The position numbers and the translations under genes are program-made. This document shows, one piece after another, positions 1,816-22,742 of a stretch of 64,000 bases of DNA. The notes below the pieces were generated by a model. That model ran no database searches and was not told the origin of the DNA. It saw only the letters and a list, made by a program, of their open reading frames with translations. The stretch is taken from positions 171,319 to 235,318 of the IMG/VR virus record IMGVR_UViG_3300028864_000014, one strand, 5' to 3'. Numbering within the stretch: the stretch's first letter is position 1; every line of letters begins with the position of its first letter.

Positions 1816-2048
1816 TAACATCTCTAACCAATCTAACTAAATTGGATAATATTGCATATGAATTATATACTGATAATTATATTTCTAAAACATATGATCC
1901 TTTATCATTATTTTCGTTTCATTATATTTATTATAAGAAATGTAGTTGGGGAGGAACATCTTATGACGATGTTAAAAAAATTTATGATAACGCAAAAATT
2001 ACAATAAGAAAATTAAAATTAATTGAAATAGAAAATATTAAATTATGA
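1812..2048 (+). CDS. RKxKL-tagged micro-ORF (LDxIAYxLY subfamily)
   Basis: LDNIAYELY; ends IRKLKLIEI. Confidence 0.75.
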   Translation: MITSLTNLTKLDNIAYELYTDNYISKTYDPLSLFSFHYIYYKKCSWGGTSYDDVKKIYDNAKITIRKLKLIEIENIKL

Positions 2049-2281
2049 TAACATCAAATAAATTAGACGATATTGCATATAAATTATATATGAATAGAAT
2101 TGATTTTGATTGCGTATATAATTCAATGAGTAAAAATGAATTTAAAAATATTCTTTATGATAAAAAATTTGACATTGATTATTATAACAGAGAAAGAACT
2201 GTTATAAAAAGTTTTTATTATAAAGCTAATATTATTTTAAGAAAAGAAAAACTTATAGAAATATCAAAAAATATAAAATGA
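2045..2281 (+). CDS. RKxKL-tagged micro-ORF (LDxIAYxLY subfamily)
   Basis: LDDIAYKLY; ends LRKEKLIEI; tandem paralog of previous. Confidence 0.75.
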   Translation: MITSNKLDDIAYKLYMNRIDFDCVYNSMSKNEFKNILYDKKFDIDYYNRERTVIKSFYYKANIILRKEKLIEISKNIK

Positions 2282-2526
2282 TATATCTTGATGATGTTAT
2301 ACATTATGTCAAACATAATAAAGTTCGTTTAGATATTGTATCTGATTATAAACATATTTATGATTATGATTTTCACATAGAAGAAAATACTGAAGTTTCA
2401 GTGTATTTACATTTAAATAAAAAACAATACGGCGGTGAAGTTTGTTATATTAAAATTATTAAAATTAAATTATCAGATATAATATCTCAAATAAGAAAAG
2501 AAAAACTCAAAAAAATAAAATCATGA
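2278..2526 (+). CDS. RKxKL-tagged micro-ORF
   Basis: ends IRKEKLKKI. Confidence 0.75.
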   Translation: MIYLDDVIHYVKHNKVRLDIVSDYKHIYDYDFHIEENTEVSVYLHLNKKQYGGEVCYIKIIKIKLSDIISQIRKEKLKKIKS

Positions 2527-2717
2527 CAATCTTTAAAGGAATAAAAATAAAAATATCAGAAACCACAAGTTATCCAACTCCTTATGGATATGAGTATAAC
2601 GCAAAGGGTTGTTATGTAAATAAAAAATTCTTAATTGTTGTTGGACATTTAGAACAAGACAACACAATAAGAATTAAATATCCAATGAAAGATATTATAA
2701 ATATAGAAATTATATAG
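2523..2717 (+). CDS. hypothetical protein
   Basis: 64 aa, ATGA overlap with previous. Confidence 0.7.
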   Translation: MTIFKGIKIKISETTSYPTPYGYEYNAKGCYVNKKFLIVVGHLEQDNTIRIKYPMKDIINIEII

Positions 2718-2722
2718 TAATC

Positions 2723-2872
2723 ATGAAAACAAATAAGCAAAACACAGAAACCGTAAATGGTTTATCATTTAGACATGCTGCACAAATTGTCAGACGTAAA
2801 ATGATGACTAAGACTTATACCGAAAAAAATGAATACAACAGGAAAGATAAATCTTGGAAAAATTTACTTTAA
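2723..2872 (+). CDS. small basic protein (49 aa)
   Basis: Hand-read: MKTNKQ...VRRKMMTKTYTEKNEYNRKDKSWKNLL*. Confidence 0.65.
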   Translation: MKTNKQNTETVNGLSFRHAAQIVRRKMMTKTYTEKNEYNRKDKSWKNLL

Positions 2873-2930
2873 TAAATTGTAAAAAAAGTTAAATAGCTGA
2901 TTTATTTATATATAAATCAGCTATTTTTAT

Positions 2931-2938
2931 TACCTTTG
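2931..2938 (+). promoter_or_regulatory. -7 element of Bacteroidota-type promoter
   Basis: TACCTTTG directly after an AATAGCTGATTT/AAATCAGCTATT hairpin. Confidence 0.6.
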
Positions 2939-2965
2939 CACTTGATAATTAAACATTCAAATATT

Positions 2966-3697
2966 ATGGAAGATAACAAAATTTACTGTCCTGTTTGTGG
3001 TTCTGAGTTAAAAGTTACTCATCGTGATAATTATGAAGATATTCAAGATCATGTATCATGTGATGGCGGAACTCCATCTCTAAAAGATGGTTATCAATGT
3101 GTAAATAAAAAATGTTTAGCATCTGAATATGGTTTGACTTGGATTCAAGATGGTGATTTATATACTAACAGAGATTTTTTTCCACCTGATGTTACTTATT
3201 CAATGGTTAATTCAAGAATAAAAGAATTGTGCGAAAATGGTAATACATTTGCAAAAAATTCATGGAATTACTATTACAAAAAAGGCTGTGATGCTGTAAA
3301 AAAGAGAACTATTATAATTAATATTTTTAAATATAAAATTGATATTATTCCAAAAAGATATGGATATAAATATCCAAATAATAAACGTGAAATGCCAAGA
3401 TTAATTGGTTGGAAATTTGAATTTTGGAAGAAAACTGGAGATTATAGCTATAGTTGTATTGTTCCAATACACACAATGGTAAAGCACGATATCAGTACTT
3501 TTAAAAATGCAATAAAAAGATTAAAGAAAAGTGAAAACCCACTTAATATGAAATCTGATATTGATGAAGTTATAAATAAAATTAAAGGTAATAATCATTG
3601 GGGACAACCAGATGAAAGAAATTATGCTAAGATATCATCGTTTATTATAAACATTTTTTATAAGAAAGAAATTAATTTTATTTTAAATTTAAAATAA
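2966..3697 (+). CDS. hypothetical protein with N-terminal CxxC
   Basis: YCPVCGS...CVNKKC; start moved from TTG 2936 (inside promoter) to ATG 2966. Confidence 0.75.
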   Translation: MEDNKIYCPVCGSELKVTHRDNYEDIQDHVSCDGGTPSLKDGYQCVNKKCLASEYGLTWIQDGDLYTNRDFFPPDVTYSMVNSRIKELCENGNTFAKNSWNYYYKKGCDAVKKRTIIINIFKYKIDIIPKRYGYKYPNNKREMPRLIGWKFEFWKKTGDYSYSCIVPIHTMVKHDISTFKNAIKRLKKSENPLNMKSDIDEVINKIKGNNHWGQPDERNYAKISSFIINIFYKKEINFILNLK

Positions 3698-3712
3698 ACT
3701 TCATTGTTATAT

Positions 3713-3722
3713 TTTATATATA
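3713..3722 (+). promoter_or_regulatory. putative late promoter TTWATATATA
   Basis: TTTATATATA 22 nt before ATG 3745; same motif precedes structural genes. Confidence 0.5.
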
Positions 3723-3744
3723 AATCTAAACAAATAAAATATAC

Positions 3745-4233
3745 ATGACAAAATTTGAAAAAAGATTAGACACGTCTTTAACTATATTGAACTCATATGT
3801 GTCATCAGGTAAAATATCAATAAATTCAACGAATGAGGTTATTGATGATTATGTAGTATTTTCAGTTAAACTTGCTGATAGACTTATTAATGAATTGACA
3901 ATATTGAATCCATATAAAGAACCTGTGATAATTAATGATAAATTTGATTATTATGATTTAGGAAATATAGAAGTTGATAGAATAATGGAGCTACCTTATG
4001 TTAATTCAGTGGTTATAAATTTAAAAGAAGAAATATTAAAACCAAATCTTAACATCAAAGAAAAATTTAAAGAAGACTATTATAGTCATTTAAATGCTCT
4101 ATTTTTGAATGTTCTTCTTAATAGATTGAATAGTTATCCAAATTATGAAAGTGCTGAAAATAGAGCATTAGACGCAAGAAAAGCTACTTCTGATATTATA
4201 CAAGATATTAGAGCGAAAATACAAAATAACTAA
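3745..4233 (+). CDS. hypothetical protein
   Basis: 162 aa ORF. Confidence 0.75.
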   Translation: MTKFEKRLDTSLTILNSYVSSGKISINSTNEVIDDYVVFSVKLADRLINELTILNPYKEPVIINDKFDYYDLGNIEVDRIMELPYVNSVVINLKEEILKPNLNIKEKFKEDYYSHLNALFLNVLLNRLNSYPNYESAENRALDARKATSDIIQDIRAKIQNN

Positions 4234-4250
4234 TTTAAATATTATTCTTA

Positions 4251-5033
4251 ATGATAAAAAAATTTGATAAATTTAATGATAATTCATATTTAGATTATTT
4301 TACATATCTATATGAACTTGCTCCAAAAGAATTGAAAGATTTAATTGATGCAACAAAAGGAGTTAATCAAAGTGAATTGTGGCACAGTGAAGGTGACGCA
4401 TACACTCATATCAGATTAGTTGTTAATCGCTTACATGATAAGTATCATGATATAAATTTAGATTTAGCAGGATTATATCATGATTTAGGAAAAGCTAGTA
4501 CTACTGAGTGGAGTGAGGAAAAAAATTCGTGGATTTCACCTGGACATGAATATGTTTCTTGTGAAATGTTAGATGATCAATCAAATTTTGTTAAAGAAAT
4601 GGGAGGAGATTATAAATTAATTTATTATATAGTTGAGAATCATATGAAAATTAAATATTTAGATAACTTTAGAATACAAAATAAAATTGATATTCTAAAT
4701 CATAAATATTTTAATGACTTGATGAAATTTGACACAGCAGATTTTGGCGGAACAGACTTGAATTGTAAGTCTGTTCGAGATTTGTCTAATATCAGAATAG
4801 AAATAAAAGAATATGATGAAATTGAACTTGAGAATAAAGAAATTTCTAAAAAGTTCAATGGAAATATAATAATGAATAACTATCCAGAATTAAAAGGTAA
4901 AGAGTTAGGAAACAAAATGACAAAATTTAAAGAATATATTTCAAATAAATTTAATACTAATCTTAGAATTTTTATTTTAAAAAATCATTCTAGCGATATT
5001 ATGAATGAATTTGATATATTTATGAAAAATTAA
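4251..5033 (+). CDS. HD-domain phosphohydrolase (CCA-enzyme-type HD region, no nucleotidyltransferase domain)
   Basis: QSELWHSEGDAYTH, LAGLYHDLGK, PGHEYVS, IVENHM, KGKELG. Confidence 0.8.
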   Translation: MIKKFDKFNDNSYLDYFTYLYELAPKELKDLIDATKGVNQSELWHSEGDAYTHIRLVVNRLHDKYHDINLDLAGLYHDLGKASTTEWSEEKNSWISPGHEYVSCEMLDDQSNFVKEMGGDYKLIYYIVENHMKIKYLDNFRIQNKIDILNHKYFNDLMKFDTADFGGTDLNCKSVRDLSNIRIEIKEYDEIELENKEISKKFNGNIIMNNYPELKGKELGNKMTKFKEYISNKFNTNLRIFILKNHSSDIMNEFDIFMKN

Positions 5034-5056
5034 AATTGAATATTTAACTATAAAAC

Positions 5057-5089
5057 AAACCAAATGATTGTATAATCATTTGGTTTTTT
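5057..5089 (+). terminator. intrinsic terminator
   Basis: AAACCAAATGATT-gtat-AATCATTTGGTTT plus T-run. Confidence 0.8.
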
Positions 5090-5110
5090 CATTTATTTTT
5101 CATATATTTG
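5079..5110 (+). promoter_or_regulatory. Bacteroidota-type sigma70 promoter
   Basis: TTTG-N20-TATATTTG, exact consensus spacing. Confidence 0.75.
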
Positions 5111-5128
5111 TATAAATATAAAATATAA

Positions 5129-5296
5129 ATGGAGTCACATATAATTATACCAATAAGAGAAATTAAAGATAGAATGGCTCAAATAGAAAGTCAGATAGAG
5201 GTATTTAAACCCGATAGTGTATATTCATATGCATTATCTAAAATGCACTCATTATTGACAGAATTATTAGATACATCAAAAAAAATTGATTTATGA
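5129..5296 (+). CDS. hypothetical protein (55 aa)
   Basis: Hand-read ORF after promoter, ATGA-coupled to next. Confidence 0.65.
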   Translation: MESHIIIPIREIKDRMAQIESQIEVFKPDSVYSYALSKMHSLLTELLDTSKKIDL

Positions 5297-5754
5297 AACT
5301 TACAAAATATACAATTGAATATATGCCATTGTATTGTAATGGTAATGACTTTAATGCTCCTTTATCTTATAGATTAAAGCTTGTGATATCAGGTGATGAA
5401 TTATTTTTAATAAAAGAATATTTTAAGTCTGGATTTAATGATAGTGAATGTTGGGATGATTGGTGGATTTGTAAAGGTTATCATTATATAAATTGGGTTT
5501 CTATTATAACTAGAAATTTTGATGAAAAGTATTTAAAAGAATTAGAAATTAAGATATTTGAAATGTTTTATGATGCATCAGAAAAAATGATAGCTGAAAT
5601 AAATGAAGAACTGTTAAAATCTATTACTACAATGAATAAACAATTATCTAAGCAAAAAGAAATATCAAAGTTTGCTGATACATTCAATAGAAGAAGAAAA
5701 TTAAAAAATATAAATAAAATAGATAAATATGAAAGTGATGCAAGTATCGTTTGA
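5293..5754 (+). CDS. hypothetical protein with RKxKL-like motif near C-terminus
   Basis: NRRRKLKNI. Confidence 0.75.
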   Translation: MKLTKYTIEYMPLYCNGNDFNAPLSYRLKLVISGDELFLIKEYFKSGFNDSECWDDWWICKGYHYINWVSIITRNFDEKYLKELEIKIFEMFYDASEKMIAEINEELLKSITTMNKQLSKQKEISKFADTFNRRRKLKNINKIDKYESDASIV

Positions 5755-5941
5755 TACATCAATAATAACAGTAATTATTGATGACAACGAAAGTTTAATA
5801 AATATATTAAAAGAAGAAGATGACTCATTCAAAGAAATTGGAAATAAAATTTGTTATGAGTATGAAACAGATTACAATGAAGAATGTGTAGTTAATGATG
5901 TAACAAATAAAAGAGGAATTATTCAATTTGAGAGTCATTAA
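5729..5941 (+). CDS. hypothetical acidic protein
   Basis: 70 aa ORF in operon. Confidence 0.7.
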   Translation: MKVMQVSFDTSIITVIIDDNESLINILKEEDDSFKEIGNKICYEYETDYNEECVVNDVTNKRGIIQFESH

Positions 5942-6439
<498 letters not shown>

Positions 6440-6451
6440 TTATATTAAAAG

Positions 6452-6646
6452 ATGAAAACTGTACTACAGATAATATTATTAGTATTAATCATATTATATA
6501 TGATTTTTAGTTCTATAAACTTTTGTGACGGATATTCAAAAGAATCCATATCACAATTCAAATCAGAAAGAAATTCAAAATTAATATCAGCAACAATACT
6601 CATTATTATACTTTACTTTTGTGGTACATTTAGTAATATATTTTAA
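6452..6646 (+). CDS. small two-TM membrane protein
   Basis: two hydrophobic segments. Confidence 0.7.
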   Translation: MKTVLQIILLVLIILYMIFSSINFCDGYSKESISQFKSERNSKLISATILIIILYFCGTFSNIF

Positions 6647-6672
6647 TAAACTTTATAATAATATATCTATAA

Positions 6673-6942
6673 ATGAAGGATGAAAAATTAATTTATAAAG
6701 AAACTGAAATATTAAATTATATTAGAAGTTATTGTAAAATAAAATATTATAGTACTACAAATTCAACGGATGAAAGAATACAGGTAGATTATAATCTCTA
6801 TTATTCAATGTATTATGATATAGAAACTGAAGGATTAATAAGATTCTATTATGGATATAAAGTTGATTTTATTGATTTATCAATAGAATTTAAGAAATAT
6901 CAAAGAAAAACAAAATTAGAAAATTTAAATAAAATATTATGA
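6673..6942 (+). CDS. RKxKL-tagged micro-ORF
   Basis: ends QRKTKLENL. Confidence 0.75.
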   Translation: MKDEKLIYKETEILNYIRSYCKIKYYSTTNSTDERIQVDYNLYYSMYYDIETEGLIRFYYGYKVDFIDLSIEFKKYQRKTKLENLNKIL

Positions 6943-7208
6943 ACAAAGAATTATTGACCAAATTTATAGAAAAAAAGACAGGACTTAATATTAAAGAAAT
7001 ATCAAGTGTAGTATTAAAAGATACAGATGATGAATATGGCTGTATAGGAGAGCATTATGTTGTTGATTGTACAACTCAAAGTGATAACTATTTCATAGGT
7101 AATGATAATGAAATTGAAACTGAAATATATAAAAAAAAATGCTTAATTAGAGTAGATGAATATGATAGATATTTAAGCTCAATTAATTCTATAATTTGGC
7201 TAATCTAA
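6939..7208 (+). CDS. hypothetical protein
   Basis: 89 aa, coupled. Confidence 0.7.
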   Translation: MNKELLTKFIEKKTGLNIKEISSVVLKDTDDEYGCIGEHYVVDCTTQSDNYFIGNDNEIETEIYKKKCLIRVDEYDRYLSSINSIIWLI

Positions 7209-7212
7209 AATA

Positions 7213-7458
7213 ATGGAACATTTAAAAGTTAGTGATAATTTAAAAATAGGTGATAAAATAATCATTTTAAATATAGAAGGAACAAGTTTAATTTATGGTC
7301 AATCTTGTACAATAATTGAGCCTTATCACAGAAGAATTGGATTAATAAGAATAAAAGAATTTCCTGATTTAACTTTATTTATAAGTAGGTTTTCTGATAT
7401 CAAAGTAGTCAGAAAATATAAATTAGAAAAAATAAATAAATATGCCATCAAAAAGTAA
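7213..7458 (+). CDS. RKxKL-tagged micro-ORF (IGDKV, SH3/KOW-like subfamily)
   Basis: LKIGDKIII...SRF..VRKYKLEKI. Confidence 0.75.
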   Translation: MEHLKVSDNLKIGDKIIILNIEGTSLIYGQSCTIIEPYHRRIGLIRIKEFPDLTLFISRFSDIKVVRKYKLEKINKYAIKK

Positions 7459-7621
7459 ATATTTGCCTGATTATTGGAGTAATGGTAATAATAAAGCGAC
7501 TGAAGTATATGAAATAATAAAAAATTCTTCAAATGAAGAAATAGTAGAAGTTTTGAATATGTTTGATATTAAAGATATAGAGAAATTTTTAAGAAATAAA
7601 AAATTAAAAAAATTAAAATGA
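7442..7621 (+). CDS. RKxKL-tagged micro-ORF (DIKDIEK subfamily)
   Basis: Hand-read 59 aa, ends FDIKDIEKFLRNKKLKKLK. Confidence 0.7.
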   Translation: MPSKSKYLPDYWSNGNNKATEVYEIIKNSSNEEIVEVLNMFDIKDIEKFLRNKKLKKLK

Positions 7622-7836
7622 GAGAAATATCAAGAGTTTCTATGTCAGAATCAGAATTATATTCAACTATATCAAGAGCCATTAATTATGACATTGTTGG
7701 AGAAATACCAATTAGAATTGATAATCTTATTAAATATGCATCAAAAGAAGATATAAATGATTCTTTAGAAAAATTTGAAATTAAAGATATTGAGAAATTT
7801 TTAAGAACTAAGAAATTGAAAAATTTAAATAAATAA
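7618..7836 (+). CDS. RKxKL-tagged micro-ORF (DIKDIEK subfamily)
   Basis: FEIKDIEKFLRTKKLKNL. Confidence 0.75.
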   Translation: MREISRVSMSESELYSTISRAINYDIVGEIPIRIDNLIKYASKEDINDSLEKFEIKDIEKFLRTKKLKNLNK

Positions 7837-7838
7837 TT

Positions 7839-8045
7839 ATGTCATTTATGTCATTTGGAATTACAAATTCAATTAGAGATTCAATTAGAGATTATCTGAA
7901 TGTTCATGAAGTCTCAGATAAAATTGGAGTACTTATTGAAAATTTATCAAAAGAAGAAATTAATAATTCTTTAGATAAATTTGATATTAAGGACATTGAA
8001 AAATATTTAAGAAACAAGAAGTTAAATAAATTATTAAATGACTAA
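7839..8045 (+). CDS. RKxKL-tagged micro-ORF (DIKDIEK subfamily)
   Basis: FDIKDIEKYLRNKKLNKL. Confidence 0.75.
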   Translation: MSFMSFGITNSIRDSIRDYLNVHEVSDKIGVLIENLSKEEINNSLDKFDIKDIEKYLRNKKLNKLLND

Positions 8046-8304
8046 TTATAAAGGATATAAAGGTTATGGAAATTATGACTATACTATAGGAGTATGGAAT
8101 TTAGAAGATAATGATTTATATAATATATCATATCAGCTATATTTATTTTCTGACGGAAATGAGAATTATGTGAATATATCTTATGATCAAAATATATTTA
8201 TTAACATGATTGAAATTGGTGATCCTTATTGTAATAAATTTTTAAAAATCGCAAAATCATTAATAAGAAAAGAAAAATTAAATATTATAAATAACTTAAT
8301 ATGA
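8038..8304 (+). CDS. RKxKL-tagged micro-ORF
   Basis: ends IRKEKLNII. Confidence 0.75.
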   Translation: MTNYKGYKGYGNYDYTIGVWNLEDNDLYNISYQLYLFSDGNENYVNISYDQNIFINMIEIGDPYCNKFLKIAKSLIRKEKLNIINNLI

Positions 8305-8540
8305 CAATTCAATTAGAATATGATATTGATAAAATTGCATATGGATTATATTTGATATATTGTAAAAAAAACCAAAATTGGGGTCCAACATTTATATTTG
8401 AGGATTATGTATATATCAAATCACAGATGAAAAATTATACTTCTGAATATGATAAAAAAATAATAGTCGATAACTATAATAAAGCTAATATAATTTTAAG
8501 AAAAATGAAATTAGAAAAATTAGAAAATGATAATAGATAA
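8301..8540 (+). CDS. RKxKL-tagged micro-ORF (DxIAYxLY subfamily)
   Basis: IDKIAYGLY; LRKMKLEKL. Confidence 0.75.
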   Translation: MTIQLEYDIDKIAYGLYLIYCKKNQNWGPTFIFEDYVYIKSQMKNYTSEYDKKIIVDNYNKANIILRKMKLEKLENDNR

Positions 8541-8775
8541 GACAAAAGGTAATTGGTGCAAAGAAGGTGAATCTGATTATATAGATGACATAGCTTTTCA
8601 ATTATATCTAAATTATTATTATAAAGAATATGGAGATTTTAATGATGATTCTCCTCAGAATAATTTTAAAACAGTAAGATATACTCATAATAGCCCGTGG
8701 TATTCATTTTATATTAAATCATTTAAAAATTTAAGAATTGAAAAATTAAAAAAATTAGAAAATGTTAATAGATAA
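8527..8775 (+). CDS. RKxKL-tagged micro-ORF (IDKxxGxW / DDIAFQLY subfamily)
   Basis: IDKTKGNW, DDIAFQLY, LRIEKLKKL. Confidence 0.75.
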   Translation: MIIDKTKGNWCKEGESDYIDDIAFQLYLNYYYKEYGDFNDDSPQNNFKTVRYTHNSPWYSFYIKSFKNLRIEKLKKLENVNR

Positions 8776-9025
8776 AACAATAGGATATTGGTGTCAAAAC
8801 AATGAGTCTGATTGTGTAGATGATATTGCTTTTCAATTATATCTAAATTGTCATTTTGATATATATGGTTCAGTCTCTACTTCTGACCAAAATGACTTTA
8901 TGTGTTTAAGATATTATCATTCTATTTACTATTTATCTGGTTTTTATGAAAAAGCATTTAAAATTTCAAAAAATTTAATAAGAAAAGAAAAATTGAAAAA
9001 GTTGAAATATGAAATCAGTGCATGA
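8762..9025 (+). CDS. RKxKL-tagged micro-ORF (IDKxxGxW / DDIAFQLY subfamily)
   Basis: IDKTIGYW, DDIAFQLY, IRKEKLKKL. Confidence 0.75.
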   Translation: MLIDKTIGYWCQNNESDCVDDIAFQLYLNCHFDIYGSVSTSDQNDFMCLRYYHSIYYLSGFYEKAFKISKNLIRKEKLKKLKYEISA

Positions 9026-9311
9026 AATTGAATATTCAAATATTCACATAGATAAATCAATAGGAAGATGGTCTAAAGATATTCTTTATTCTGAACTTGA
9101 AGATGTGTTTTATCAGATATACGTTCATTGGTATTATAATGAATATATTATTGAAAATGATTCTGAAAATCCTTTATTGTCTCAAACATATTTCATGTCT
9201 TATATGAATACTATTAAAGAAACTAAGAATCACCATTCTTATGATGATTATTATAATAAAGCAACTCACATATTACGAAAAATAAAATTAGAAAAATTGA
9301 AAAATGAATAG
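9009..9311 (+). CDS. RKxKL-tagged micro-ORF (IDKxxGxW subfamily)
   Basis: IDKSIGRW, EDVFYQIY, LRKIKLEKL. Confidence 0.75.
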   Translation: MKSVHEIEYSNIHIDKSIGRWSKDILYSELEDVFYQIYVHWYYNEYIIENDSENPLLSQTYFMSYMNTIKETKNHHSYDDYYNKATHILRKIKLEKLKNE

Positions 9312-9555
9312 TGATTTTAAAATAGGAGATAAGGTATTTTTATGTGATGCAAGAAATTGTTTTACTGCAGAGTTGAATAAACAATATACTATCATTAGCA
9401 TAAAATATGATGATTATAACAAATATACAAAAATAGCATTTAATGAAAATATATCTGAATCAGAAGAATTGTGTTATTTGGATTCCAGAAGATTTAAAAA
9501 AGATATAAAATATGAAAGAAAAATAAAATTAAAAGAAATATTAAATAATGATTAA
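9304..9555 (+). CDS. RKxKL-tagged micro-ORF (IGDKV subfamily)
   Basis: FKIGDKVF...RRFKKDIKYERKIKLKEI. Confidence 0.75.
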   Translation: MNSDFKIGDKVFLCDARNCFTAELNKQYTIISIKYDDYNKYTKIAFNENISESEELCYLDSRRFKKDIKYERKIKLKEILNND

Positions 9556-9775
9556 TAAATTTAAATCAGGAGATAAAGTTATATGTATAGATAATACAAA
9601 TGCTTTTGAATTAATACCTTATATAAAATCATACACAATATCTCATATAAAAACTATTTTTATTTTTTTAGTTGATGAAGAATCCAAATTTCCTTATGTT
9701 TATACTAGATTTGAATTCGATATTAAAACAATGAGAAAGGATAAATTGAAAAAAATACCTAATCATGAAAATTGA
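9548..9775 (+). CDS. RKxKL-tagged micro-ORF (IGDKV subfamily)
   Basis: FKSGDKVI...RFEFDIKTMRKDKLKKI. Confidence 0.75.
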   Translation: MINKFKSGDKVICIDNTNAFELIPYIKSYTISHIKTIFIFLVDEESKFPYVYTRFEFDIKTMRKDKLKKIPNHEN

Positions 9776-10004
9776 AAAAATTAAATGTAATTTAAAAATA
9801 GGAGAACAAATTGTTATAATTAAAGATACTATTGGTAATTCGGAATTAAAAATGAATAAAATTTACATAGTTGAATATATTCATGAATATGTTAATCATA
9901 TTAAGTTAGTAGGATTTGAAGAACGTATATATCAAAGTAAATTATTTAGCAATGATATTAGATTAATAAGAAAAATTAAAATAGAAGAATTAAATGAACA
10001 ATGA
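9765..10004 (+). CDS. RKxKL-tagged micro-ORF (IGDKV subfamily)
   Basis: LKIGEQIV...DIRLIRKIKIEEL. Confidence 0.75.
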   Translation: MKIEKIKCNLKIGEQIVIIKDTIGNSELKMNKIYIVEYIHEYVNHIKLVGFEERIYQSKLFSNDIRLIRKIKIEELNEQ

Positions 10005-10185
10005 TATTGAGAATTACGATATGTTAGTTGAATATTTTAATCAAAAATTAAGTTTAGCGTCTGGTATTCCAAAAAAATATTTATATCCAGATCCACTTGA
10101 TTCAATTGATTTTGATGTCATATTAAAATATTTAAGAAAAAAGAAATTAGAATACATAAAAAATAACAATTTAAATAATGATTAA
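9994..10185 (+). CDS. RKxKL-tagged micro-ORF
   Basis: DSIDFDVILKYLRKKKLEYI. Confidence 0.75.
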   Translation: MNNDIENYDMLVEYFNQKLSLASGIPKKYLYPDPLDSIDFDVILKYLRKKKLEYIKNNNLNND

Positions 10186-16859: not shown

Positions 16860-16873
16860 AAAAAATTTAAAAT

Positions 16874-17215: not shown

Positions 17216-17218
17216 TTT

Positions 17219-17371
17219 ATGACAATATTTCATCTTTGTACTATTTTTTCTGTAATAGGTTCTGGTATAATGATTCTTTTTTTTATTGTTGCTATATTGT
17301 CTGCCTTAACTAATCCATCTAAATTTGTATTAGGTGATATGTTATATGATAATAATTTATCTGAAAAATGA
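17219..17371 (+). CDS. small membrane protein (50 aa)
   Basis: Hand-read; hydrophobic; ends TGA followed by in-frame open sequence. Confidence 0.55.
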   Translation: MTIFHLCTIFSVIGSGIMILFFIVAILSALTNPSKFVLGDMLYDNNLSEK

Positions 17372-17578
17372 ATTTTTATATTTCTTATTTTTAATATAAT
17401 ATGTTTTTTGTTTTATAAAAAAATAAAAACATTAAGACGTATAGATTTATATAAGAATAAAATATCTTATTATAAAGATTTATTATATAAAGATTATATT
17501 ACTCTACGTGAGAAAAAAGAATACAATAAAGAAATTAGTAAATATTCAAGATTATTAAAATTGAAATTGTTAAAATAA
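17372..17578 (+). pseudogene. start-less frame encoding TM segment + basic C-terminus
   Basis: IFIFLIFNIICFLFYKK...SRLLKLKLLK*; nearest ATG (17368) is out of frame. Confidence 0.35.
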
Positions 17579-17583
17579 AAATT

Positions 17584-17970
17584 ATGAAAATCAAAAAAGA
17601 AGATTTAAAGATGTATTTAAAAGTTATTGAAACTTTTCAATTGATGTCATTGTTTGCGATTATTGTCACATATATTCTTGATTTTAAACATATTCAATTA
17701 AATTCAATGAATTATATCACAGATTCAATTATTATTCAATTGTCAATGCTTATTATTCCTGTATTATCTTGTTTGGTTTTTTATTTTTTAAAACATCATT
17801 ATGATAATAAATATGAAGAATTCAGAAAAAATATTCCTGAATATGTTTATAAAAATGAATATTATTCAACAGAGCCTTTATCAGATAAGTCTGAAAAAAT
17901 AAAAATAACCAACATAAAGGAAAAATGTAATATAAATGGTTATGGATATTATGATCCTAATAACTCTTAA
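17584..17970 (+). CDS. membrane protein with IPEYVY/INGYG C-domain
   Basis: two TM segments then domain shared with next ORF. Confidence 0.75.
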   Translation: MKIKKEDLKMYLKVIETFQLMSLFAIIVTYILDFKHIQLNSMNYITDSIIIQLSMLIIPVLSCLVFYFLKHHYDNKYEEFRKNIPEYVYKNEYYSTEPLSDKSEKIKITNIKEKCNINGYGYYDPNNS

Positions 17971-17973
17971 TAT

Positions 17974-18183
17974 ATGATAACAACTAATAGTTTAAATATT
18001 CCTGAATATGTTTATATGCACAGTGTTGTACATAATAAAGAAACAATTTCATCAGCATCATCATTTGATGACGGCTTAATTATAATATCAATTAAGCCTT
18101 TAAATGATGATGCAATAAAGGTAAAATTAACAACTATTAAAAAGAAGTGTTATATTAATGGTTATGGTATTTATGAACCATAA
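17974..18183 (+). CDS. soluble paralog of previous C-domain
   Basis: IPEYVY...KKCYINGYGIYEP. Confidence 0.75.
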   Translation: MITTNSLNIPEYVYMHSVVHNKETISSASSFDDGLIIISIKPLNDDAIKVKLTTIKKKCYINGYGIYEP

Positions 18184-18197
18184 AAAATATTAAAAAT

Positions 18198-18569
18198 ATG
18201 AATTATTGTTGGATTAGATTTGAACTTGATTTATTTAATCATAAGCAAAAAATTTTAAAATCATTAGGCACTGATGATATAGAATATGAATTGAAAAAAC
18301 GCAAAGAATCTGATATTTACGTTAAAGATAGAAGTATTTTATATACAGAAATAGATTTAGAATTGAGTGATTATGATTCAGAGATATTATATGACTTGAC
18401 TGATGATGAAATGTTAAATGAATTGAAAATAAGGGGTTATAAGGTATTTAACAAAAATGAATATCCATCATTAGATTTGGCTACAAAAGAAGATATTTGC
18501 ACTATTTTAGGATTGAAAAAATGGGCAACAAAAGAGCAAATTTTATCTGAACTAAATATAATATTATGA
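18198..18569 (+). CDS. hypothetical protein
   Basis: 123 aa with internal repeat (TDDIEYELKKR / TDDEMLNELKIRG). Confidence 0.75.
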   Translation: MNYCWIRFELDLFNHKQKILKSLGTDDIEYELKKRKESDIYVKDRSILYTEIDLELSDYDSEILYDLTDDEMLNELKIRGYKVFNKNEYPSLDLATKEDICTILGLKKWATKEQILSELNIIL

Positions 18570-18703
18570 TTATAAACTATAATAAACCATATGTTCATAT
18601 TAGGCAACTATCTAAATCTACAGAATCTGAAATAAAATTTAAGATTAATATGATGTTAAGAAAACAGAAGCTTTTAAATATTAAAAACTGTAATGAAAAC
18701 TGA
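18566..18703 (+). CDS. RKxKL-tagged micro-ORF (45 aa)
   Basis: Hand-read; LRKQKLLNI. Confidence 0.65.
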   Translation: MIINYNKPYVHIRQLSKSTESEIKFKINMMLRKQKLLNIKNCNEN

Positions 18704-18818
18704 AAGTAAAATTGTTCTGAATGCAGTACAGACTTTAAAATATTACTGTTTAATGCTGAAGAATAAAAAAAGAAAACAGAAACTTAAAAAACTGAGTAAT
18801 GTTCAATTTAGGAGATAA
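18693..18818 (+). CDS. RKxKL-tagged micro-ORF (41 aa)
   Basis: Hand-read; KRKQKLKKL. Confidence 0.65.
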   Translation: MKTESKIVLNAVQTLKYYCLMLKNKKRKQKLKKLSNVQFRR

Positions 18819-18986
18819 AATTATTGATAAGTCATTTAGCAATGAAGTTTTTACATTTAAAAAATATAGTGCTAATAATATATTATCCCATTATTTTTTT
18901 ATATATGAAGATGAATATTTTCATTATGTAGATAATTGCATTACATTATCAGAATTTAGAAAACAGAAACTTAAAAAACTGAGTAA
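18771..18986. repeat. exact 29-bp direct repeat encoding the RKQKLKKLS tag
   Basis: AGAAAACAGAAACTTAAAAAACTGAGTAA at 18771-99 and 18958-86. Confidence 0.9.
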
Positions 18987-18993
18987 ATGTTAA
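18799..18993 (+). CDS. RKxKL-tagged micro-ORF (IGDKV subfamily)
   Basis: FNLGDKII; FRKQKLKKL. Confidence 0.75.
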   Translation: MFNLGDKIIDKSFSNEVFTFKKYSANNILSHYFFIYEDEYFHYVDNCITLSEFRKQKLKKLSKC

Positions 18994-19175
18994 GAAAAGG
19001 AGATGTATTAAGGTACAGATATGACGATAATAAGATTGTTACATTTGATTCTTATGTACTTGATGATCCTAATTTCTTTTTCACTCAAGAAATTCCAGGT
19101 ATGTTTAATTATATTCCTAATTTTATAACAGCATCTGAAATTAGAAAGCATAAATTAGAAAAACTAAATAAATGA
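18987..19175 (+). CDS. RKxKL-tagged micro-ORF (IGDKV subfamily)
   Basis: LRKGDVL; IRKHKLEKL. Confidence 0.75.
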   Translation: MLRKGDVLRYRYDDNKIVTFDSYVLDDPNFFFTQEIPGMFNYIPNFITASEIRKHKLEKLNK

Positions 19176-19417
19176 TACAAAATATAGACATTAAAAATAT
19201 TCATATTAATGATACTGTTATTGCAGTTAATATAGGTAACACTAGTTTAGAATTAAATAAAAAATATTATATTAAAGAAATTGATTATTTTCATAGTATA
19301 GAGCAATACTATTTTAAATTATATCATATGGGAGATGAAGGATTTTTAATTAGTAGATTTGATATTGATTTGAATGATATTAGAAAAAATAAATTAGAAA
19401 AAATAAATAAATGCTAA
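19172..19417 (+). CDS. RKxKL-tagged micro-ORF (IGDKV subfamily)
   Basis: INDTVIAV; RFDIDLNDIRKNKLEKI. Confidence 0.75.
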   Translation: MIQNIDIKNIHINDTVIAVNIGNTSLELNKKYYIKEIDYFHSIEQYYFKLYHMGDEGFLISRFDIDLNDIRKNKLEKINKC

Positions 19418-19659
19418 AACCAATTGATATTAAAAATATACAAGTCAATTCTGAAGTTGTTGCAGTTTCTACTGATATGAGCAATTTAGAAATTGGTAAA
19501 ATATATAAAATCAAAGAAATTGTTCACATAGAAGAATTTAATGTATATCAATTTAAACTTTTCAAAATGAGAGATACTAGATATTTAATAGATAGATTTA
19601 ATTCTGATATTAAATCAATCAGGATGGAAAAATTAAATAAAATATCAAATCATGATTGA
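19411..19659 (+). CDS. RKxKL-tagged micro-ORF (IGDKV subfamily)
   Basis: RFNSDIKSIRMEKLNKI. Confidence 0.75.
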   Translation: MLKPIDIKNIQVNSEVVAVSTDMSNLEIGKIYKIKEIVHIEEFNVYQFKLFKMRDTRYLIDRFNSDIKSIRMEKLNKISNHD

Positions 19660-19888
19660 CATTAAAAAATTAAAAATAGGAAATAAAGTAATTGCAGTCA
19701 ATGTTAATTTTTCTGAATTAATATTAAATAAAAAATACACAATTAGTTATATTGATGTTTGTGATAATTCATGTAATGACCGAATTAGATTGATTGAGAC
19801 TGGTAATAAGTTATATTATGATTTTAGATTTGATATTGATTTAAACTACATCCGAAAGGAAAAATTAAATAAAATATCAAATGATTAA
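19652..19888 (+). CDS. RKxKL-tagged micro-ORF (IGDKV subfamily)
   Basis: KIGNKVIAV; RFDIDLNYIRKEKLNKI. Confidence 0.75.
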   Translation: MIDIKKLKIGNKVIAVNVNFSELILNKKYTISYIDVCDNSCNDRIRLIETGNKLYYDFRFDIDLNYIRKEKLNKISND

Positions 19889-20126
19889 CCTCAAAACATC
19901 AAAAATTGGTGATAAAGTAATTGCTACTGATGTCACTCATTCTTTATTGACATTAAATAAAAAATATACAATTAGTGAAATTATTTATAATAACTCTGAT
20001 TTTGATGACTATAATTTTTGTGTAAGACTTAAAGAAACTGCATTAATTATATATTTTCCGTATAGATTTAAATATGATTTGAAAACATCAAGAAATAAAA
20101 AACTTAAACAACTATGCAAAAAATAA
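19881..20126 (+). CDS. RKxKL-tagged micro-ORF (IGDKV subfamily)
   Basis: KIGDKVIA; RFKYDLKTSRNKKLKQL. Confidence 0.75.
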   Translation: MINLKTSKIGDKVIATDVTHSLLTLNKKYTISEIIYNNSDFDDYNFCVRLKETALIIYFPYRFKYDLKTSRNKKLKQLCKK

Positions 20127-20365
20127 AATCTTTTAAAATTGGAGATAAAGTTATTGTTATTGATGATAGTAATAACAATTTAATTCTGACTAAAAAATAT
20201 ACAATTAGTGGAGTTTTTCATAGAGAATCATTAGATAATATTCCTGAACATAATCATTATTTAACATTCATAGAGTCTGGTGAACAAAAATATTTCAGTT
20301 ATAGATTTGATTTTGATTTAAAAACATCAAGAAAGAAAAAAATTGAAATCTTATGTCAAAAATAA
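20114..20365 (+). CDS. RKxKL-tagged micro-ORF (IGDKV subfamily)
   Basis: KIGDKVIV; RFDFDLKTSRKKKIEIL. Confidence 0.75.
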   Translation: MQKIKSFKIGDKVIVIDDSNNNLILTKKYTISGVFHRESLDNIPEHNHYLTFIESGEQKYFSYRFDFDLKTSRKKKIEILCQK

Positions 20366-20604
20366 AAATTGAATATTTGAAAATTGGTGATGATGTAGTT
20401 GTAATTAATAATAACAATACAATATTAGAATTTGGTAAAAAATATAAAATTAAACAAATTCATTTCAGTGTAAAATTTAATAAATATTACTTATCATTAG
20501 TAGGAAATTCCGATTTGAGATATAAAATTAAACGATTCAAATTAGATATTAAAACTGAAAGAAAACAAAAAATAGATAAACTTAAAGAATATGAAAGTAT
20601 ATAA
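20353..20604 (+). CDS. RKxKL-tagged micro-ORF (IGDKV subfamily)
   Basis: KIGDDVVV; RFKLDIKTERKQKIDKL. Confidence 0.75.
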   Translation: MSKIKIEYLKIGDDVVVINNNNTILEFGKKYKIKQIHFSVKFNKYYLSLVGNSDLRYKIKRFKLDIKTERKQKIDKLKEYESI

Positions 20605-20887
20605 AATTTACGAAATATCATATAGATATGGAGATGAACAAACCCCAGATGAAACGATCTTCACAACACCAGAAGTTAGAGATGAGTATTTTAAAGAACT
20701 TCTTAAAATTAGCAAAGAAAATGATCGTCTAACTGAAAGATTAGATTCAACAACAGAAAATGAATTTGTATTTGATGATGGCGGTAAATGGTCATATGAA
20801 ACTAAAAAATCAGATGAAGATATGAAAATAATTGAATCATTTACCATTAATGAAAAAGGATTGTTTAGGTTTTCATATATGAAATAA
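20591..20887 (+). CDS. hypothetical acidic protein
   Basis: 98 aa coupled ORF. Confidence 0.7.
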   Translation: MKVYKIYEISYRYGDEQTPDETIFTTPEVRDEYFKELLKISKENDRLTERLDSTTENEFVFDDGGKWSYETKKSDEDMKIIESFTINEKGLFRFSYMK

Positions 20888-20888
20888 T

Positions 20889-21137
20889 ATGGTAATTGAT
20901 AAACAATTTGGAATATGGGATTATAATGTTTCAACTTTATTAGATGATTTAGCATATTTCTTCTGTATTCAAGATTTTCATTCTGAAAATTATTATGAAG
21001 AGAAAATACCAACACAAAATCAATTTATTAAATGGTATAAGAGAAGTGATTATGGAATTAAAATGTATAAAAAAGCAAATAAATATCATTATAGAGAATT
21101 AATAAAACAAAAAATAGAAACTTTGAATAACATATAA
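20889..21137 (+). CDS. micro-ORF of IDKxxGxW subfamily (degenerate tag)
   Basis: IDKQFGIW, LLDDLAYFF, LIKQKIETL. Confidence 0.75.
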   Translation: MVIDKQFGIWDYNVSTLLDDLAYFFCIQDFHSENYYEEKIPTQNQFIKWYKRSDYGIKMYKKANKYHYRELIKQKIETLNNI

Positions 21138-21139
21138 TA

Positions 21140-21259
21140 ATGTCAGAAACTACAGATCAAATAAAATTATTAAGAGAATTGGCAATTAAACTTCACAAGA
21201 AATTTGTCAATAATATCAGAAAAAATAAATTACAAAAACTAAATGATAAGTTATGCTGA
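21140..21259 (+). CDS. RKxKL-tagged micro-ORF (39 aa)
   Basis: Hand-read; IRKNKLQKL. Confidence 0.65.
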   Translation: MSETTDQIKLLRELAIKLHKKFVNNIRKNKLQKLNDKLC

Positions 21260-21390
21260 TTAGTAAAAAAATAAATGGAGTTCCAGATATTGATAAAAAA
21301 ATCTTAGAAGAATTTACAAGGAAAATGAATAAACATTTCCGTAATAAAGATAGGAAAGAAAAATTAAATAAATTAAATGAAAAAAGATAA
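21253..21390 (+). CDS. RKxKL-tagged micro-ORF (45 aa)
   Basis: Hand-read; DRKEKLNKL. Confidence 0.65.
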   Translation: MLISKKINGVPDIDKKILEEFTRKMNKHFRNKDRKEKLNKLNEKR

Positions 21391-21559
21391 AACATTTGCA
21401 TGGTTTCCATTATTGACAGAAGATAATGAATTGATTTGGCTAAAACATCTAAACGTAGAAGATAAACATTTTGAGCACAATTTTGAATTTTGGTGGTTTG
21501 GCGAATATATGAATTTATGTATTGGTTATAATAGAAATGTGTTTTCTAAAATAAAATAA
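21377..21559 (+). CDS. hypothetical phage protein
   Basis: FAWFP..T.DNELIWLK pattern. Confidence 0.7.
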   Translation: MKKDKTFAWFPLLTEDNELIWLKHLNVEDKHFEHNFEFWWFGEYMNLCIGYNRNVFSKIK

Positions 21560-21561
21560 TA

Positions 21562-21759
21562 ATGGCAGCATCAAAAACAAAAGTTAAAATAGACGATGGT
21601 ATTTATAATGCTATTTGGATATCAGATAATTTAACTATATTATCTAATGATAATAAAGAATTAGTTACAATTAAATCTATTATGAGAATAATTGGTGATA
21701 ATCTTCAAAAAGAAAAAGTTGAGATAATAAAAGGTATTGTGAGTTTTTACTATAAATAA
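21562..21759 (+). CDS. hypothetical protein (tandem pair, copy 1)
   Basis: IDDGIYNAIW...LTILS. Confidence 0.75.
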   Translation: MAASKTKVKIDDGIYNAIWISDNLTILSNDNKELVTIKSIMRIIGDNLQKEKVEIIKGIVSFYYK

Positions 21760-21768
21760 AAAATAAAT

Positions 21769-21972
21769 ATGAAAAACAGTTTATCAAAAAGAAATGTAGA
21801 TATTAAAAATGGAGAGTACAATGCTCTTTGGAGTGGATATGAGTTAGAAATATTATCAAATGAAGATGTGTCAGATGATATATTAGCAATCATTCCAACT
21901 ATCAATGGAGTGAGAGGGATGAACTGTAAGGTTCGAGTTGAGGTTATTGATGGATTAGTTTATGAGTTATAA
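21769..21972 (+). CDS. hypothetical protein (tandem pair, copy 2)
   Basis: IKNGEYNALW...LEILS. Confidence 0.75.
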   Translation: MKNSLSKRNVDIKNGEYNALWSGYELEILSNEDVSDDILAIIPTINGVRGMNCKVRVEVIDGLVYEL

Positions 21973-22100
21973 AAATATTAAATAAATAGATAAATAGAAA
22001 TATTTAACTATTTATTTTTCTTTATATGATAACTATTTACTATCTTCGTAATATATCAAAATCGTTTTTTATCTAGTATAAATTATCAAATCTTTATAAT

Positions 22101-22349
22101 ATGAAAGCAAAAAAAGTAAATTCTGTTTTCCCTATAAATTTCAATTATAAAAAATCAGTTGATGCATTTGATAATTATATTAAATCTAATAGTGATTGGA
22201 TTAAATTCAAAAACAAATATAAAATTCCAGATAAATATATCACAGATGAAAATAAAGATTTATTTATTTTCATGAAAAATTCTGGATTGAACGCTGAACA
22301 AGCATTTTTAAGTAAAATTAAAGAAATAGAAAATATATGCAAAAAATAA
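22101..22349 (+). CDS. hypothetical protein
   Basis: 82 aa after variant -7 element TATCTTCG (22041-48). Confidence 0.7.
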   Translation: MKAKKVNSVFPINFNYKKSVDAFDNYIKSNSDWIKFKNKYKIPDKYITDENKDLFIFMKNSGLNAEQAFLSKIKEIENICKK

Positions 22350-22504: not shown

Positions 22505-22506
22505 AT

Positions 22507-22737: not shown

Positions 22738-22742
22738 AAATA

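What the first reader, a model, noticed from the sequence alone, without database searches (positions are those of the whole stretch)
18566..21390. Tag-coding DNA may double as a recombination joint for gene-cassette shuffling
Seen: a second run of 10 consecutive tagged ORFs (18566-20604), each stop overlapping the next start. An exact 29-bp repeat (18771-99, 18958-86) encodes RKQKLKKLS at the ends of two genes with unrelated bodies. Established: T4-type phages shuffle early genes through repeated regulatory cassettes (PeSL elements of RB49-type phages). Inference: here the repeated unit is the translated 3' end plus coupled start, so recombination between tags would insert, delete or reorder whole micro-genes in frame, like an integrase-free integron.
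Basis: partly seen in the sequence, partly recalled or inferred. Interest (0 to 1): 0.75.

Follow-up and report, generated by a model that had tools for sequence, protein, structure and literature searches.

The report
Shared C-terminal tag on megaphage micro-genes
About 65 tiny genes of an uncultured peat megaphage, with unrelated protein bodies, all end in the same eight-residue helix motif just before the next gene's start; this motif is kept for the protein's sake, and its DNA is also one of the places where whole genes get duplicated, deleted or overwritten.

Summary
Window 18566-20604 carries ten head-to-tail overlapping ORFs that each end in R-K-x-K-[LI]-x-K-[LI] plus a 1-13 residue tail. 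The 29-bp exact repeat (18771/18958) is real.

The motif is genome-wide: about 65 ORFs in the 235-kb contig, 43 regex hits against 0.1 in shuffles. It is selected at the amino-acid level: codon use equals genome codon use, L/I/M interchange, and AlphaFold puts it in a C-terminal helix. It sits on at least two unrelated folds: an all-helical family A (336 clusters in metagenomes) and an SH3-like family B. Eight of the ten ORFs here are tandem paralogs of family B.

Five relatives carry from about three to six units in place of these ten. Three indel junctions map inside the tag core and two map just beside it. Others lie in a stop/start microhomology or inside a body, and untagged genes come and go about as often. 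Tag-to-tag identity is mostly 9-10 nt.

So the recombination idea is partly supported, as opportunistic unequal crossover and gene conversion in a paralog array. It is not supported as a dedicated integron-like or PeSL-like system. What the tag does in the protein remains unknown and is the more interesting question.

The parts
18566..18703 (+). Unit 1: 45-aa tagged ORF with a short non-barrel body. Tag core at 18659-18682 (RKQKLLNI).
   Evidence: Its ortholog is the 44-aa ORF in L021.
18693..18818 (+). Unit 2: 41-aa tagged orphan ORF. Tag core at 18771-18794. It carries copy 1 of the 29-bp repeat (18771-18799).
   Evidence: A decayed homolog is present in L025 and it is absent from L021.
18799..18993 (+). 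Unit 3: 64-aa short family B member (MFxxGDKI...). Tag core at 18958-18981. It carries copy 2 of the 29-bp repeat (18958-18986). The two repeat copies bracket this gene's body.
   Evidence: Homologs are present in L025, L028 and L030.
18987..19175 (+). Unit 4: 62-aa short family B member (MLRKGD...). Tag core at 19143-19166.
   Evidence: Its ortholog is the 66-aa ORF in L021.
19172..19659 (+). Units 5 and 6: 81-aa and 82-aa family B paralogs, a duplicate pair. Tag cores at 19381-19404 and 19621-19644.
   Evidence: L021, L028 and L030 each carry one counterpart.
19652..20365 (+). Units 7-9: 78-aa, 81-aa and 83-aa family B paralogs (KYTIS type). Tag cores at 19853-19876, 20091-20114 and 20330-20353. 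Relatives carry one or two of these.
   Evidence: The single L021 unit of this type is a chimera of unit 7's body with the unit 8/9 pre-tag and tag.
20353..20604 (+). Unit 10: 83-aa family B member, the best conserved unit. Tag core at 20560-20583. Its tail KEYESI overlaps the start of the next gene.
   Evidence: dN/dS is 0.16-0.59 against its orthologs. AlphaFold model with mean pLDDT 87.5.
20591..20887 (+). Untagged 98-aa anchor gene, conserved in all relatives.
20889..21137 (+). Family A member (82 aa) with a decayed tag (RELIKQKIETL). The tag is intact in L021, the gene is absent from L025, and it is truncated in L030 and L032.
21140..21390 (+). Two tagged micro-genes of 39 and 45 aa. Tag cores at 21218-21241 and 21352-21375. 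L021 has a single hybrid whose crossover lies inside the tag core.
2045..10185 (+). Earlier runs of tagged ORFs in the window: 2045-2526, 5293-5754, 6673-6942 and 7411-10185. They mix family A, family B, a three-member family and singletons.

Best explanation
The window is part of a 235-kb fragment of an uncultured megaphage from peat, 24% G+C, with relatives on contigs up to 711 kb.

Its + strand blocks of micro-genes encode several unrelated small-protein families and many orphans. All end in the same C-terminal helix motif, R-K-x-K-[LI]-x-K-[LI].

Shown: the motif is maintained by selection on the protein. It is part of a confidently predicted terminal alpha-helix on two different folds.

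Inferred: the helix gives these proteins a common property, such as docking to one shared partner, oligomerisation, or recognition by a phage-encoded machine.

Shown: the next gene's ATG almost always lies 0-19 nt after the motif. So motif, short tail and overlapped start form one conserved joint.

Shown: the run at 18566-20604 is mainly a tandem array of family B paralogs. It expands, contracts and homogenises by duplication, unequal crossover, microhomology deletion and gene conversion.

Inferred: the joint is the most alike DNA between units, and only in-register events leave intact genes. That is why many surviving junctions fall in or beside the tag. The recombination role is a by-product of homology plus selection, carried out by ordinary recombination (a RecA-like protein and an SbcCD-like protein are encoded). 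It is not a dedicated cassette system.
For: Protein-level selection:
- Codon use at tag positions is indistinguishable from genome use (p = 0.09-0.8).
- Orthologous tags vary at all three codon positions yet keep R, K and aliphatic residues.
- All 54 + strand nucleotide-matrix hits are in frame at ORF C-termini and none is non-coding.
- Longer proteins carry the motif internally.

Structure:
- Family A is all-helical, with the tag in a long terminal helix at pLDDT 84-92.
- Family B is a small beta-barrel plus terminal helix 66-81, mean pLDDT 87.5.
- The two family profiles align only over their last 25 columns.

These are real genes: dN/dS is 0.16-0.63, and family A has 336 representative clusters, 145 of the top 150 carrying the tag.

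The joint: the core ends -1 to +19 nt from the next ATG in 48 of 52 cases. 92% of tagged genes overlap the next gene, against 33% of untagged small genes (p = 4e-13).

Array dynamics:
- Ten units here against six in L021, six in L028, five in L030 and about three in L025.
- Junctions inside the tag core.
- A chimeric unit and a 5' switch.
- Non-tag junctions.
- Untagged gene indels.

Recombination genes: RecA-like and SbcCD-like.
Against: - The function of the tag is not shown. No library (Pfam, PHROGs, PADLOC, PDB sequences, Foldseek, ESM Atlas) gives a lead.
- The very tight link between the tag and the next start could mean a role in translation rather than in the finished protein.
- Only about ten rearrangement events were mapped, in one region. 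Enrichment of junctions in the tag could not be tested against a proper null.
- The concerted-evolution signal is not significant (p = 0.13-0.20).
- Population-level evidence (split reads, circles) was unobtainable.
Confidence: 0.6

Rival explanations
1. The tag-coding DNA is kept in part as a recombination joint. Tag-to-tag exchange, possibly through excised circles, inserts, deletes and reorders micro-genes in frame, like an integron without an integrase or a coding version of PeSL.
For: - Three junctions lie inside the tag core.
- The 29-bp perfect direct repeat brackets exactly one cassette, as a single crossover with a circle would leave.
- Some tag variants sit on different bodies in close relatives.
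- Derived tag variants are shared by neighbouring units in L028 and L030.
- Unrelated folds share only the tag.
- Other loci in the metagenome share 31-mers or longer with tags.
Against: - There is no extra nucleotide-level constraint on tag codons.
- Neighbouring tags are not significantly more alike at synonymous sites than distant tags.
- The median shared run is 9-10 nt.
- Several junctions lie outside tags and untagged genes also turn over.
- No recombinase, hairpin or promoter-terminator element was found.
- Most units here are plain tandem paralogs.
Confidence: 0.15
2. The tag acts in cis during translation. As a nascent basic peptide, or as A-rich mRNA just upstream of the overlapped stop/start, it slows or holds the ribosome so that it re-initiates on the next micro-gene. 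The finished helix would then be secondary.
For: - The tag core ends within 0-19 nt of the next ATG in 48 of 52 cases.
- 92% of tagged genes overlap the next gene, against 33% of untagged small genes.
- The tag is confined to long polycistronic + strand blocks without internal promoter or terminator signals.
- It does not depend on the protein body.
Against: - Codon choice is free, so mRNA sequence is not conserved.
- The conserved aliphatic positions and the confident helix fit a folded element.
- The tail length varies from 1 to 13 residues.
- The motif also occurs inside longer proteins with no start behind it.
- A few tagged genes have no adjacent downstream gene.
Confidence: 0.1
3. The tag is a nucleotide signal that merely happens to be translated, such as a promoter, a translation-initiation region or a binding site for a regulator.
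For: - It lies just upstream of start codons.
- It is A-rich, like initiation regions in hosts that do not use Shine-Dalgarno pairing (my own knowledge, not tested here).
Against: - No copy occurs in non-coding DNA, and - strand genes have one in all.
- Synonymous sites vary freely and L/I/M interchange.
- There is no excess of promoter-like sites.
Confidence: 0.04
4. All tagged proteins are one very old superfamily whose only surviving common element is the C-terminal helix. On this reading no tag was ever transferred between bodies.
For: - The bodies evolve fast (dN/dS up to 0.63).
- Short forms grade into the barrel family.
- The tag is the best conserved part in every family.
Against: - Family A is predicted all-helical and family B a beta-barrel.
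- The profiles align only in the tag.
- At least five body groups and about fifteen orphans carry the tag.
Confidence: 0.1

Closest known systems
PeSL (promoter-early stem-loop) cassettes of RB49/phi1-type T4-like phages (PMC2839356, PMC4122927)
   Same: A short repeated element flanks small non-essential genes in variable regions. Differences between relatives have junctions in the repeated element. Whole small genes are gained, lost and replaced.
   Different: PeSLs are intergenic, non-coding promoter plus terminator units, and mini-circles have been shown for them. Here the repeat is translated. There are no intergenic spaces, no promoter-like excess and no stem-loops. Identity is mostly 9-10 nt, circles are untested, and the phage is not shown to be T4-type.
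Tandem paralog arrays that evolve by unequal crossover and gene conversion, for example poxvirus 'gene accordions' (from my own knowledge)
   Same: Same-orientation paralogs with 229-245 nt spacing, copy number differing between relatives, chimeric units and local homogenisation.
   Different: The units are whole overlapping genes of about 80 codons. The shared element extends to genes of other folds and to orphans.
Integron gene cassettes
   Same: Promoterless small ORFs in one orientation, each ending in a repeated element, with cassette content differing between relatives.
   Different: There is no IntI-type recombinase in the 235 kb. There is no attC-like hairpin. The repeated element is coding. 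Most 'cassettes' are paralogs of each other.
Conserved peptide motifs that mark swap points in polymorphic toxins: VENN in CdiA and PxxxxDPxGL in Rhs (from my own knowledge)
   Same: DNA that encodes a conserved peptide motif also serves as the homology where variable modules are exchanged in frame.
   Different: Those motifs precede a variable C-terminal toxin domain within one large protein, with orphan modules downstream. Here the motif ends each of many separate micro-genes, and nothing indicates toxin or immunity function.
Terminal address or degradation peptides: the T4 capsid-targeting sequence, ClpX C-terminal signals of the ssrA and MuA type, and encapsulin or microcompartment cargo peptides (from my own knowledge)
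   Same: A short terminal, often helical peptide is shared by otherwise unrelated proteins. The genome encodes ClpP and a ClpC-like unfoldase with a ClpP-docking-type GIGFG loop.
   Different: The tag is followed by 1-13 variable residues, so it is not strictly terminal. No link to the Clp proteins or to the virion was tested.

Membership tests
PeSL-type regulatory cassette (T4-like phages) | Strong sigma-70-like early promoter in an intergenic element | tested here: not met
   64 promoter-like sites were found in 16500-24200, against 76.7 expected. The units overlap, so there is no intergenic DNA.
PeSL-type regulatory cassette (T4-like phages) | Stem-loop terminator next to the promoter | tested here: not met
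   The only terminator-like site is at 24135-24170, outside the array. There are no local inverted repeats at tags.
PeSL-type regulatory cassette (T4-like phages) | Insertion, deletion and replacement junctions between relatives fall in the repeated element | tested here: inconclusive
   Three junctions lie in the tag core and two beside it. Others lie elsewhere, and untagged genes also turn over.
PeSL-type regulatory cassette (T4-like phages) | Excised mini-circles joined at the repeat | not testable with these tools
   The runs are held only as Logan contigs. The listed joints have 22-29 nt sides and come from other tag-bearing loci.
Integron | IntI tyrosine recombinase next to the array | tested here: not met
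   PF00589 has no match in the 235-kb contig, while the control rang in 14 of 14 genomes. The contig is only about a third of the genome.
Integron | attC-type imperfect inverted repeat at each cassette end | tested here: not met
   No hairpin-forming repeats at tags.
Tandem paralog array with unequal crossover and gene conversion | Same-orientation paralogous units with regular spacing | tested here: met
   Eight of the ten ORFs align as one family. Direct repeat families have 229-245 nt spacing.
Tandem paralog array with unequal crossover and gene conversion | Copy-number differences and chimeric units between relatives | tested here: met
   Ten units here against six, six, five and about three in relatives. 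L021 unit 4 is a chimera and L028 unit 6 switches in its 5' end.
Tandem paralog array with unequal crossover and gene conversion | Concerted evolution of the repeated segment within a genome | tested here: inconclusive
   The 29-bp identity is specific to this genome. L028 and L030 have shared derived tags. Nearest neighbour in the same genome: 7 of 21 tags against 2 of 21 bodies, p = 0.13.
Terminal targeting or degradation peptide | Short terminal peptide shared by proteins with unrelated folds | tested here: met
Terminal targeting or degradation peptide | A cognate receptor or protease that recognises the peptide | not tested
   ClpP and a ClpC-like ATPase are encoded, but no interaction was tested.

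The most novel reading that the evidence does not exclude
The motif is a portable C-terminal address that this megaphage lineage puts on dozens of unrelated micro-proteins. It could be a docking or degradation signal for a phage machine, such as its own ClpC-ClpP pair, or a peptide that couples translation of consecutive genes. Tag-to-tag exchange would then be the route by which new bodies acquire the address. On this reading one 24-nt coding segment serves as protein signal, gene junction and recombination joint together.
Probability: 0.2. Interest if true: 0.85.

Novelty: new variant of a known kind. Interest (0 to 1): 0.6.

Why it matters
Megaphage genomes are full of tiny genes of unknown function. 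Here about one in seven + strand ORFs of a 235-kb fragment carries the same C-terminal helix on different folds, and the same holds in more distant relatives (20 of 33 genes in one 10-kb stretch).

That points to one shared partner or process for a large part of the phage's accessory proteome. It can be reached with a single bait peptide.

It is also a clean natural case where a conserved coding motif, an overlapped stop/start and recombination junctions coincide. This makes it useful for asking how micro-gene arrays grow and how new small proteins are recruited.

Tried and rejected
- Family and structure libraries gave nothing significant for tagged proteins: Pfam, PHROGs and PADLOC scans, PDB sequence search with both family profiles, and ESM Atlas (scores 0.57 or less).
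- Foldseek on the family B model gave only weak SH3, Tudor and KOW-like matches, none at E of 0.001 or better.
- Close relatives in IMG/VR were 99.9% identical and so uninformative.
- A profile search of IMG/VR with the nine-sequence alignment failed because no block was conserved enough.
- Megablast against GenBank phages found no match.
- Family A is absent from GenBank phages by tblastn.
- The 735-kb phage LR756501 is the only GenBank phage in the collection matching the radical SAM gene (37% identity). Family A found no match in the whole record, and no tags occur in the 40 kb examined.
- Laying public runs on the region yielded only short contigs. The 'joints' were other tag-bearing loci, so circles and rare deletions cannot be judged.
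- The relative's full record could not be searched.
- Rfam found nothing in the window.
- The Gp23, sheath and NCLDV capsid family searches were negative or uninformative.
- I rejected a nucleotide-level signal and chance.


Full report
WHAT THE SEQUENCE IS. The window is bases 171319-235318 of a 235,318-bp IMG/VR viral contig with 24% G+C, rated 33% complete. Proteins of the region recur on contigs up to 711 kb, and the DNA is found in many peat metagenome runs. The contig encodes:
- a ribonucleotide reductase, an NAD-dependent ligase and a fused SbcCD-like nuclease-ATPase;
- a baseplate spike with an M23 peptidase, and collagen-like fibre proteins;
- a RecA-like protein, ClpP and a ClpC-like unfoldase.

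The only GenBank phage in the collection that matches the radical SAM gene is the 735-kb uncultured phage LR756501, at 37% identity. No T4-type hallmark was found, but the control for that search did not ring either. I treat it as a fragment of a megaphage.

THE OBSERVATION. Ten + strand ORFs of 41-83 codons run from 18566 to 20604. Each next ATG lies upstream of the previous stop, giving overlaps of 4-20 nt. Each ends in R-K-x-K-[LI]-x-K-[LI] followed by 1-13 residues. The 29-bp exact repeat at 18771 and 18958 is there. No repeated 29-mer arose in 100 Markov simulations.

The tag is a genome-wide feature.
- A simple pattern finds 43 C-terminal copies in 469 + strand ORFs, against 0.115 in residue shuffles.
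- A profile finds 45 of its 48 strong hits within 13 residues of a C-terminus.
- A nucleotide matrix built from the cores finds 54 sites on the + strand and one on the - strand. All 54 are in frame near an ORF's end, and 13 were new tagged ORFs.
- That gives about 65 tagged ORFs in 235 kb.

PROTEIN OR DNA? The evidence points to protein.
- Codon choice at the conserved R, K and L positions cannot be told from genome-wide use (p = 0.09-0.8).
- Among orthologs of one unit, position 5 of the core reads ATA, TTA, CTT or CTG, and position 8 reads CTT, TTA, ATT or ATG. R and K stay fixed.
- No copy of the nucleotide motif lies in non-coding DNA.
- AlphaFold models place the tag in a long terminal helix in family A (pLDDT 84-92). 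In family B it is helix 66-81 behind a small SH3-like barrel (mean pLDDT 87.5).
- The two family profiles align only over their last 25 columns.
- Ortholog pairs give dN/dS of 0.16-0.63, so these are real, fast-evolving genes.

The tagged set splits into family A (16 members here), family B (15 members), three small groups and about 15 orphans. Family A has 336 representative clusters in a 1.8-billion-protein library, and 145 of the top 150 carry the tag. In a more distant 27% G+C relative, 20 of 33 genes in 10 kb are tagged. No library names any of these proteins. I found no paper on the motif.

THE JOINT. The tag core ends -1 to +19 nt before the next ATG in 48 of 52 cases. Of tagged genes, 92% overlap the next gene, against 33% of untagged small genes (p = 4e-13). 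The variable tail is therefore largely the upstream frame running into the next gene's start. There is no excess of promoter-like sites in the block. Its only terminator-like hairpin is at 24135-24170, where the strands converge.

THE RUN ITSELF. Eight of the ten ORFs (18799-20604) are diverged tandem paralogs of family B. Direct repeat families have 229-245 nt spacing. The first ORF is a short non-barrel form. The second is an orphan with a decayed homolog in L025.

COMPARISON WITH RELATIVES. Five relatives at roughly 60-85% identity were recovered. Between the same two anchor genes, the window has ten units, L021 six, L028 six and L030 five. L025 has about three, including a decayed unit and a fused pair. 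L032 is partial. The junctions map as follows.
1. Units 2 and 3 of the window are missing in L021. The left flank of the L021 tag matches unit 1, its right flank matches unit 3, and the switch is at the core.
2. L021 has one hybrid in place of the 39-aa and 45-aa genes. The first 14 nt of its core are of the 39-aa type and the last 10 nt are of the 45-aa type.
3. An extra unit lies after unit 10 in L021 and L032 but not in four other genomes. In those four, the left flank is unit 10 (37-42 of 45 nt) and the right flank is that of the extra unit in L021 (34-38 of 42 nt). The switch is in the first half of the core. Its distribution among close and distant relatives implies more than one event.
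4. The single KYTIS-type unit of L021 has unit 7's body but the pre-tag, tag and tail of units 8 and 9. The switch is 5-8 codons before the core.
5. The last unit of L028 has a unit-7-like 5' end and switches in the KxGD motif.
6. The family A gene is missing in L025, with the junction in a TAATATG stop/start microhomology. The gene on its left has no tag.
7. L025 has an in-body deletion at an ATTTGA microhomology, plus what looks like a 1-nt loss in the purine run of a tag. This fuses two units. L030 fuses the 45-aa gene to the next gene.
8. At least six untagged genes differ between the window and L021 over 15 kb, one with plainly tag-free junctions.

IS THE TAG DNA A GOOD RECOMBINATION SUBSTRATE? 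Across 1326 tag pairs the longest shared exact run has a median of 9 nt, or 10 nt for neighbours. Only five pairs share 23 nt or more. Synonymous identity is 0.81 for neighbours, 0.76 for distant pairs and 0.67 expected from codon bias. Neighbours against distant pairs gives p = 0.20.

There are still signs of local exchange.
- The 29-bp identity between units 2 and 3 uses rare codons (CAG, CTT, CTG). It is absent from the closest relative L025, so it is recent.
- Three adjacent L028 units share RKNKLSK with the same TCT codon. Two adjacent L030 units share R[LI]RKLEKL.
- The nearest neighbour lies in the same genome for 7 of 21 tags against 2 of 21 bodies (p = 0.13).

No integrase, hairpin or promoter-terminator element accompanies the tags. 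Public runs are held only as contigs. The 'joints' they show have 22-29 nt sides and are other tag-bearing loci, so circles remain untested.

VERDICT. The tag is first of all a protein motif. Its DNA, together with the overlapped start, is where a good share of surviving crossovers fall. That is what homology plus selection for intact genes would give in a tandem paralog array, in a phage that encodes RecA-like and SbcCD-like proteins. The stronger claim of a dedicated joint in the manner of integrons or PeSLs (PMC2839356) is not supported by codon statistics, by repeat length or by the non-tag events. It is also not excluded.

The open and more interesting question is what a shared C-terminal helix on about 65 unrelated micro-proteins does, and why it always abuts the next start. 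Candidates are a common docking, address or degradation signal, or a role in coupling translation. The contig's own ClpC-like ATPase and ClpP are an obvious thing to test for the first of these.

Noticed in passing
window 11630-11840 and 12700-13040: Two non-coding stretches are conserved with relative L021 (about 3090-3305 and 3495-3880 there). The second is richer in G+C than its surroundings. They are candidates for structured RNAs. Rfam finds nothing at gathering or E of 1 or less.
   Followed up: partly
G000:C1:130390-131145 and 94277-96811 (outside the window; L015:17390-18142 and L014:277-2808): The phage encodes a full-length ClpP (E = 3.7e-55). It also encodes a ClpC/ClpA-like double-ring AAA+ unfoldase with a short middle domain and a GIGFG loop at the position where ClpC has its ClpP-docking loop.
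   Followed up: partly
L028:8233-9329: In one relative the conserved 98-aa anchor gene is cut short at 52 codons. It is followed by a 202-aa protein with MerR and Resolvase domains (a serine recombinase, IS607-like in my reading) and a further ORF. This looks like a mobile element inserted next to the array.
   Followed up: no
window 45854-46267 (+), 47990-48397 (+), 26153-26584 (-); G000:C1:117644-118225: Longer proteins carry the same motif internally. In three it is near the N-terminal third (…[14 protein letters not shown]…). In one it lies between a family B body and a Cys-rich C-terminal extension, as if two ORFs had fused.
   Followed up: partly
window 21354-21387, 19310-19430 and 18947-19067: Contig depth rises two- to four-fold at tags in peat runs. 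Contigs with unrelated flanks share the tag plus ATG stretch, so near-identical tag DNA exists at other loci in this or co-occurring phages.
   Followed up: no
L025:5714-6097: In one close relative the 123-aa anchor gene is replaced by a 127-aa protein with a lipoprotein or secretion-type signal peptide ending …LSLNAQ. This is a hint of a Bacteroidota-like host (my own knowledge, not tested).
   Followed up: no
window 24135-24170: A 16-bp-stem hairpin with T-runs on both sides lies where the + strand micro-gene block meets the - strand structural block. It looks like a two-way terminator.
   Followed up: no
window 24174-26066, 51125-52870 and 55407-57197 (- strand): Large proteins match collagen-like tail fibre families, with long perfect short-period repeats (for example 25261-25350).
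   Followed up: no
L035 (LR756501.1:678232-719074): The 735-kb uncultured phage is the only GenBank phage in the collection matching this region's radical SAM gene (37% identity). A family A search of the whole record found nothing, and no tagged ORF occurs in the 40 kb examined. The tag therefore appears confined to the 24-27% G+C lineage.
   Followed up: partly
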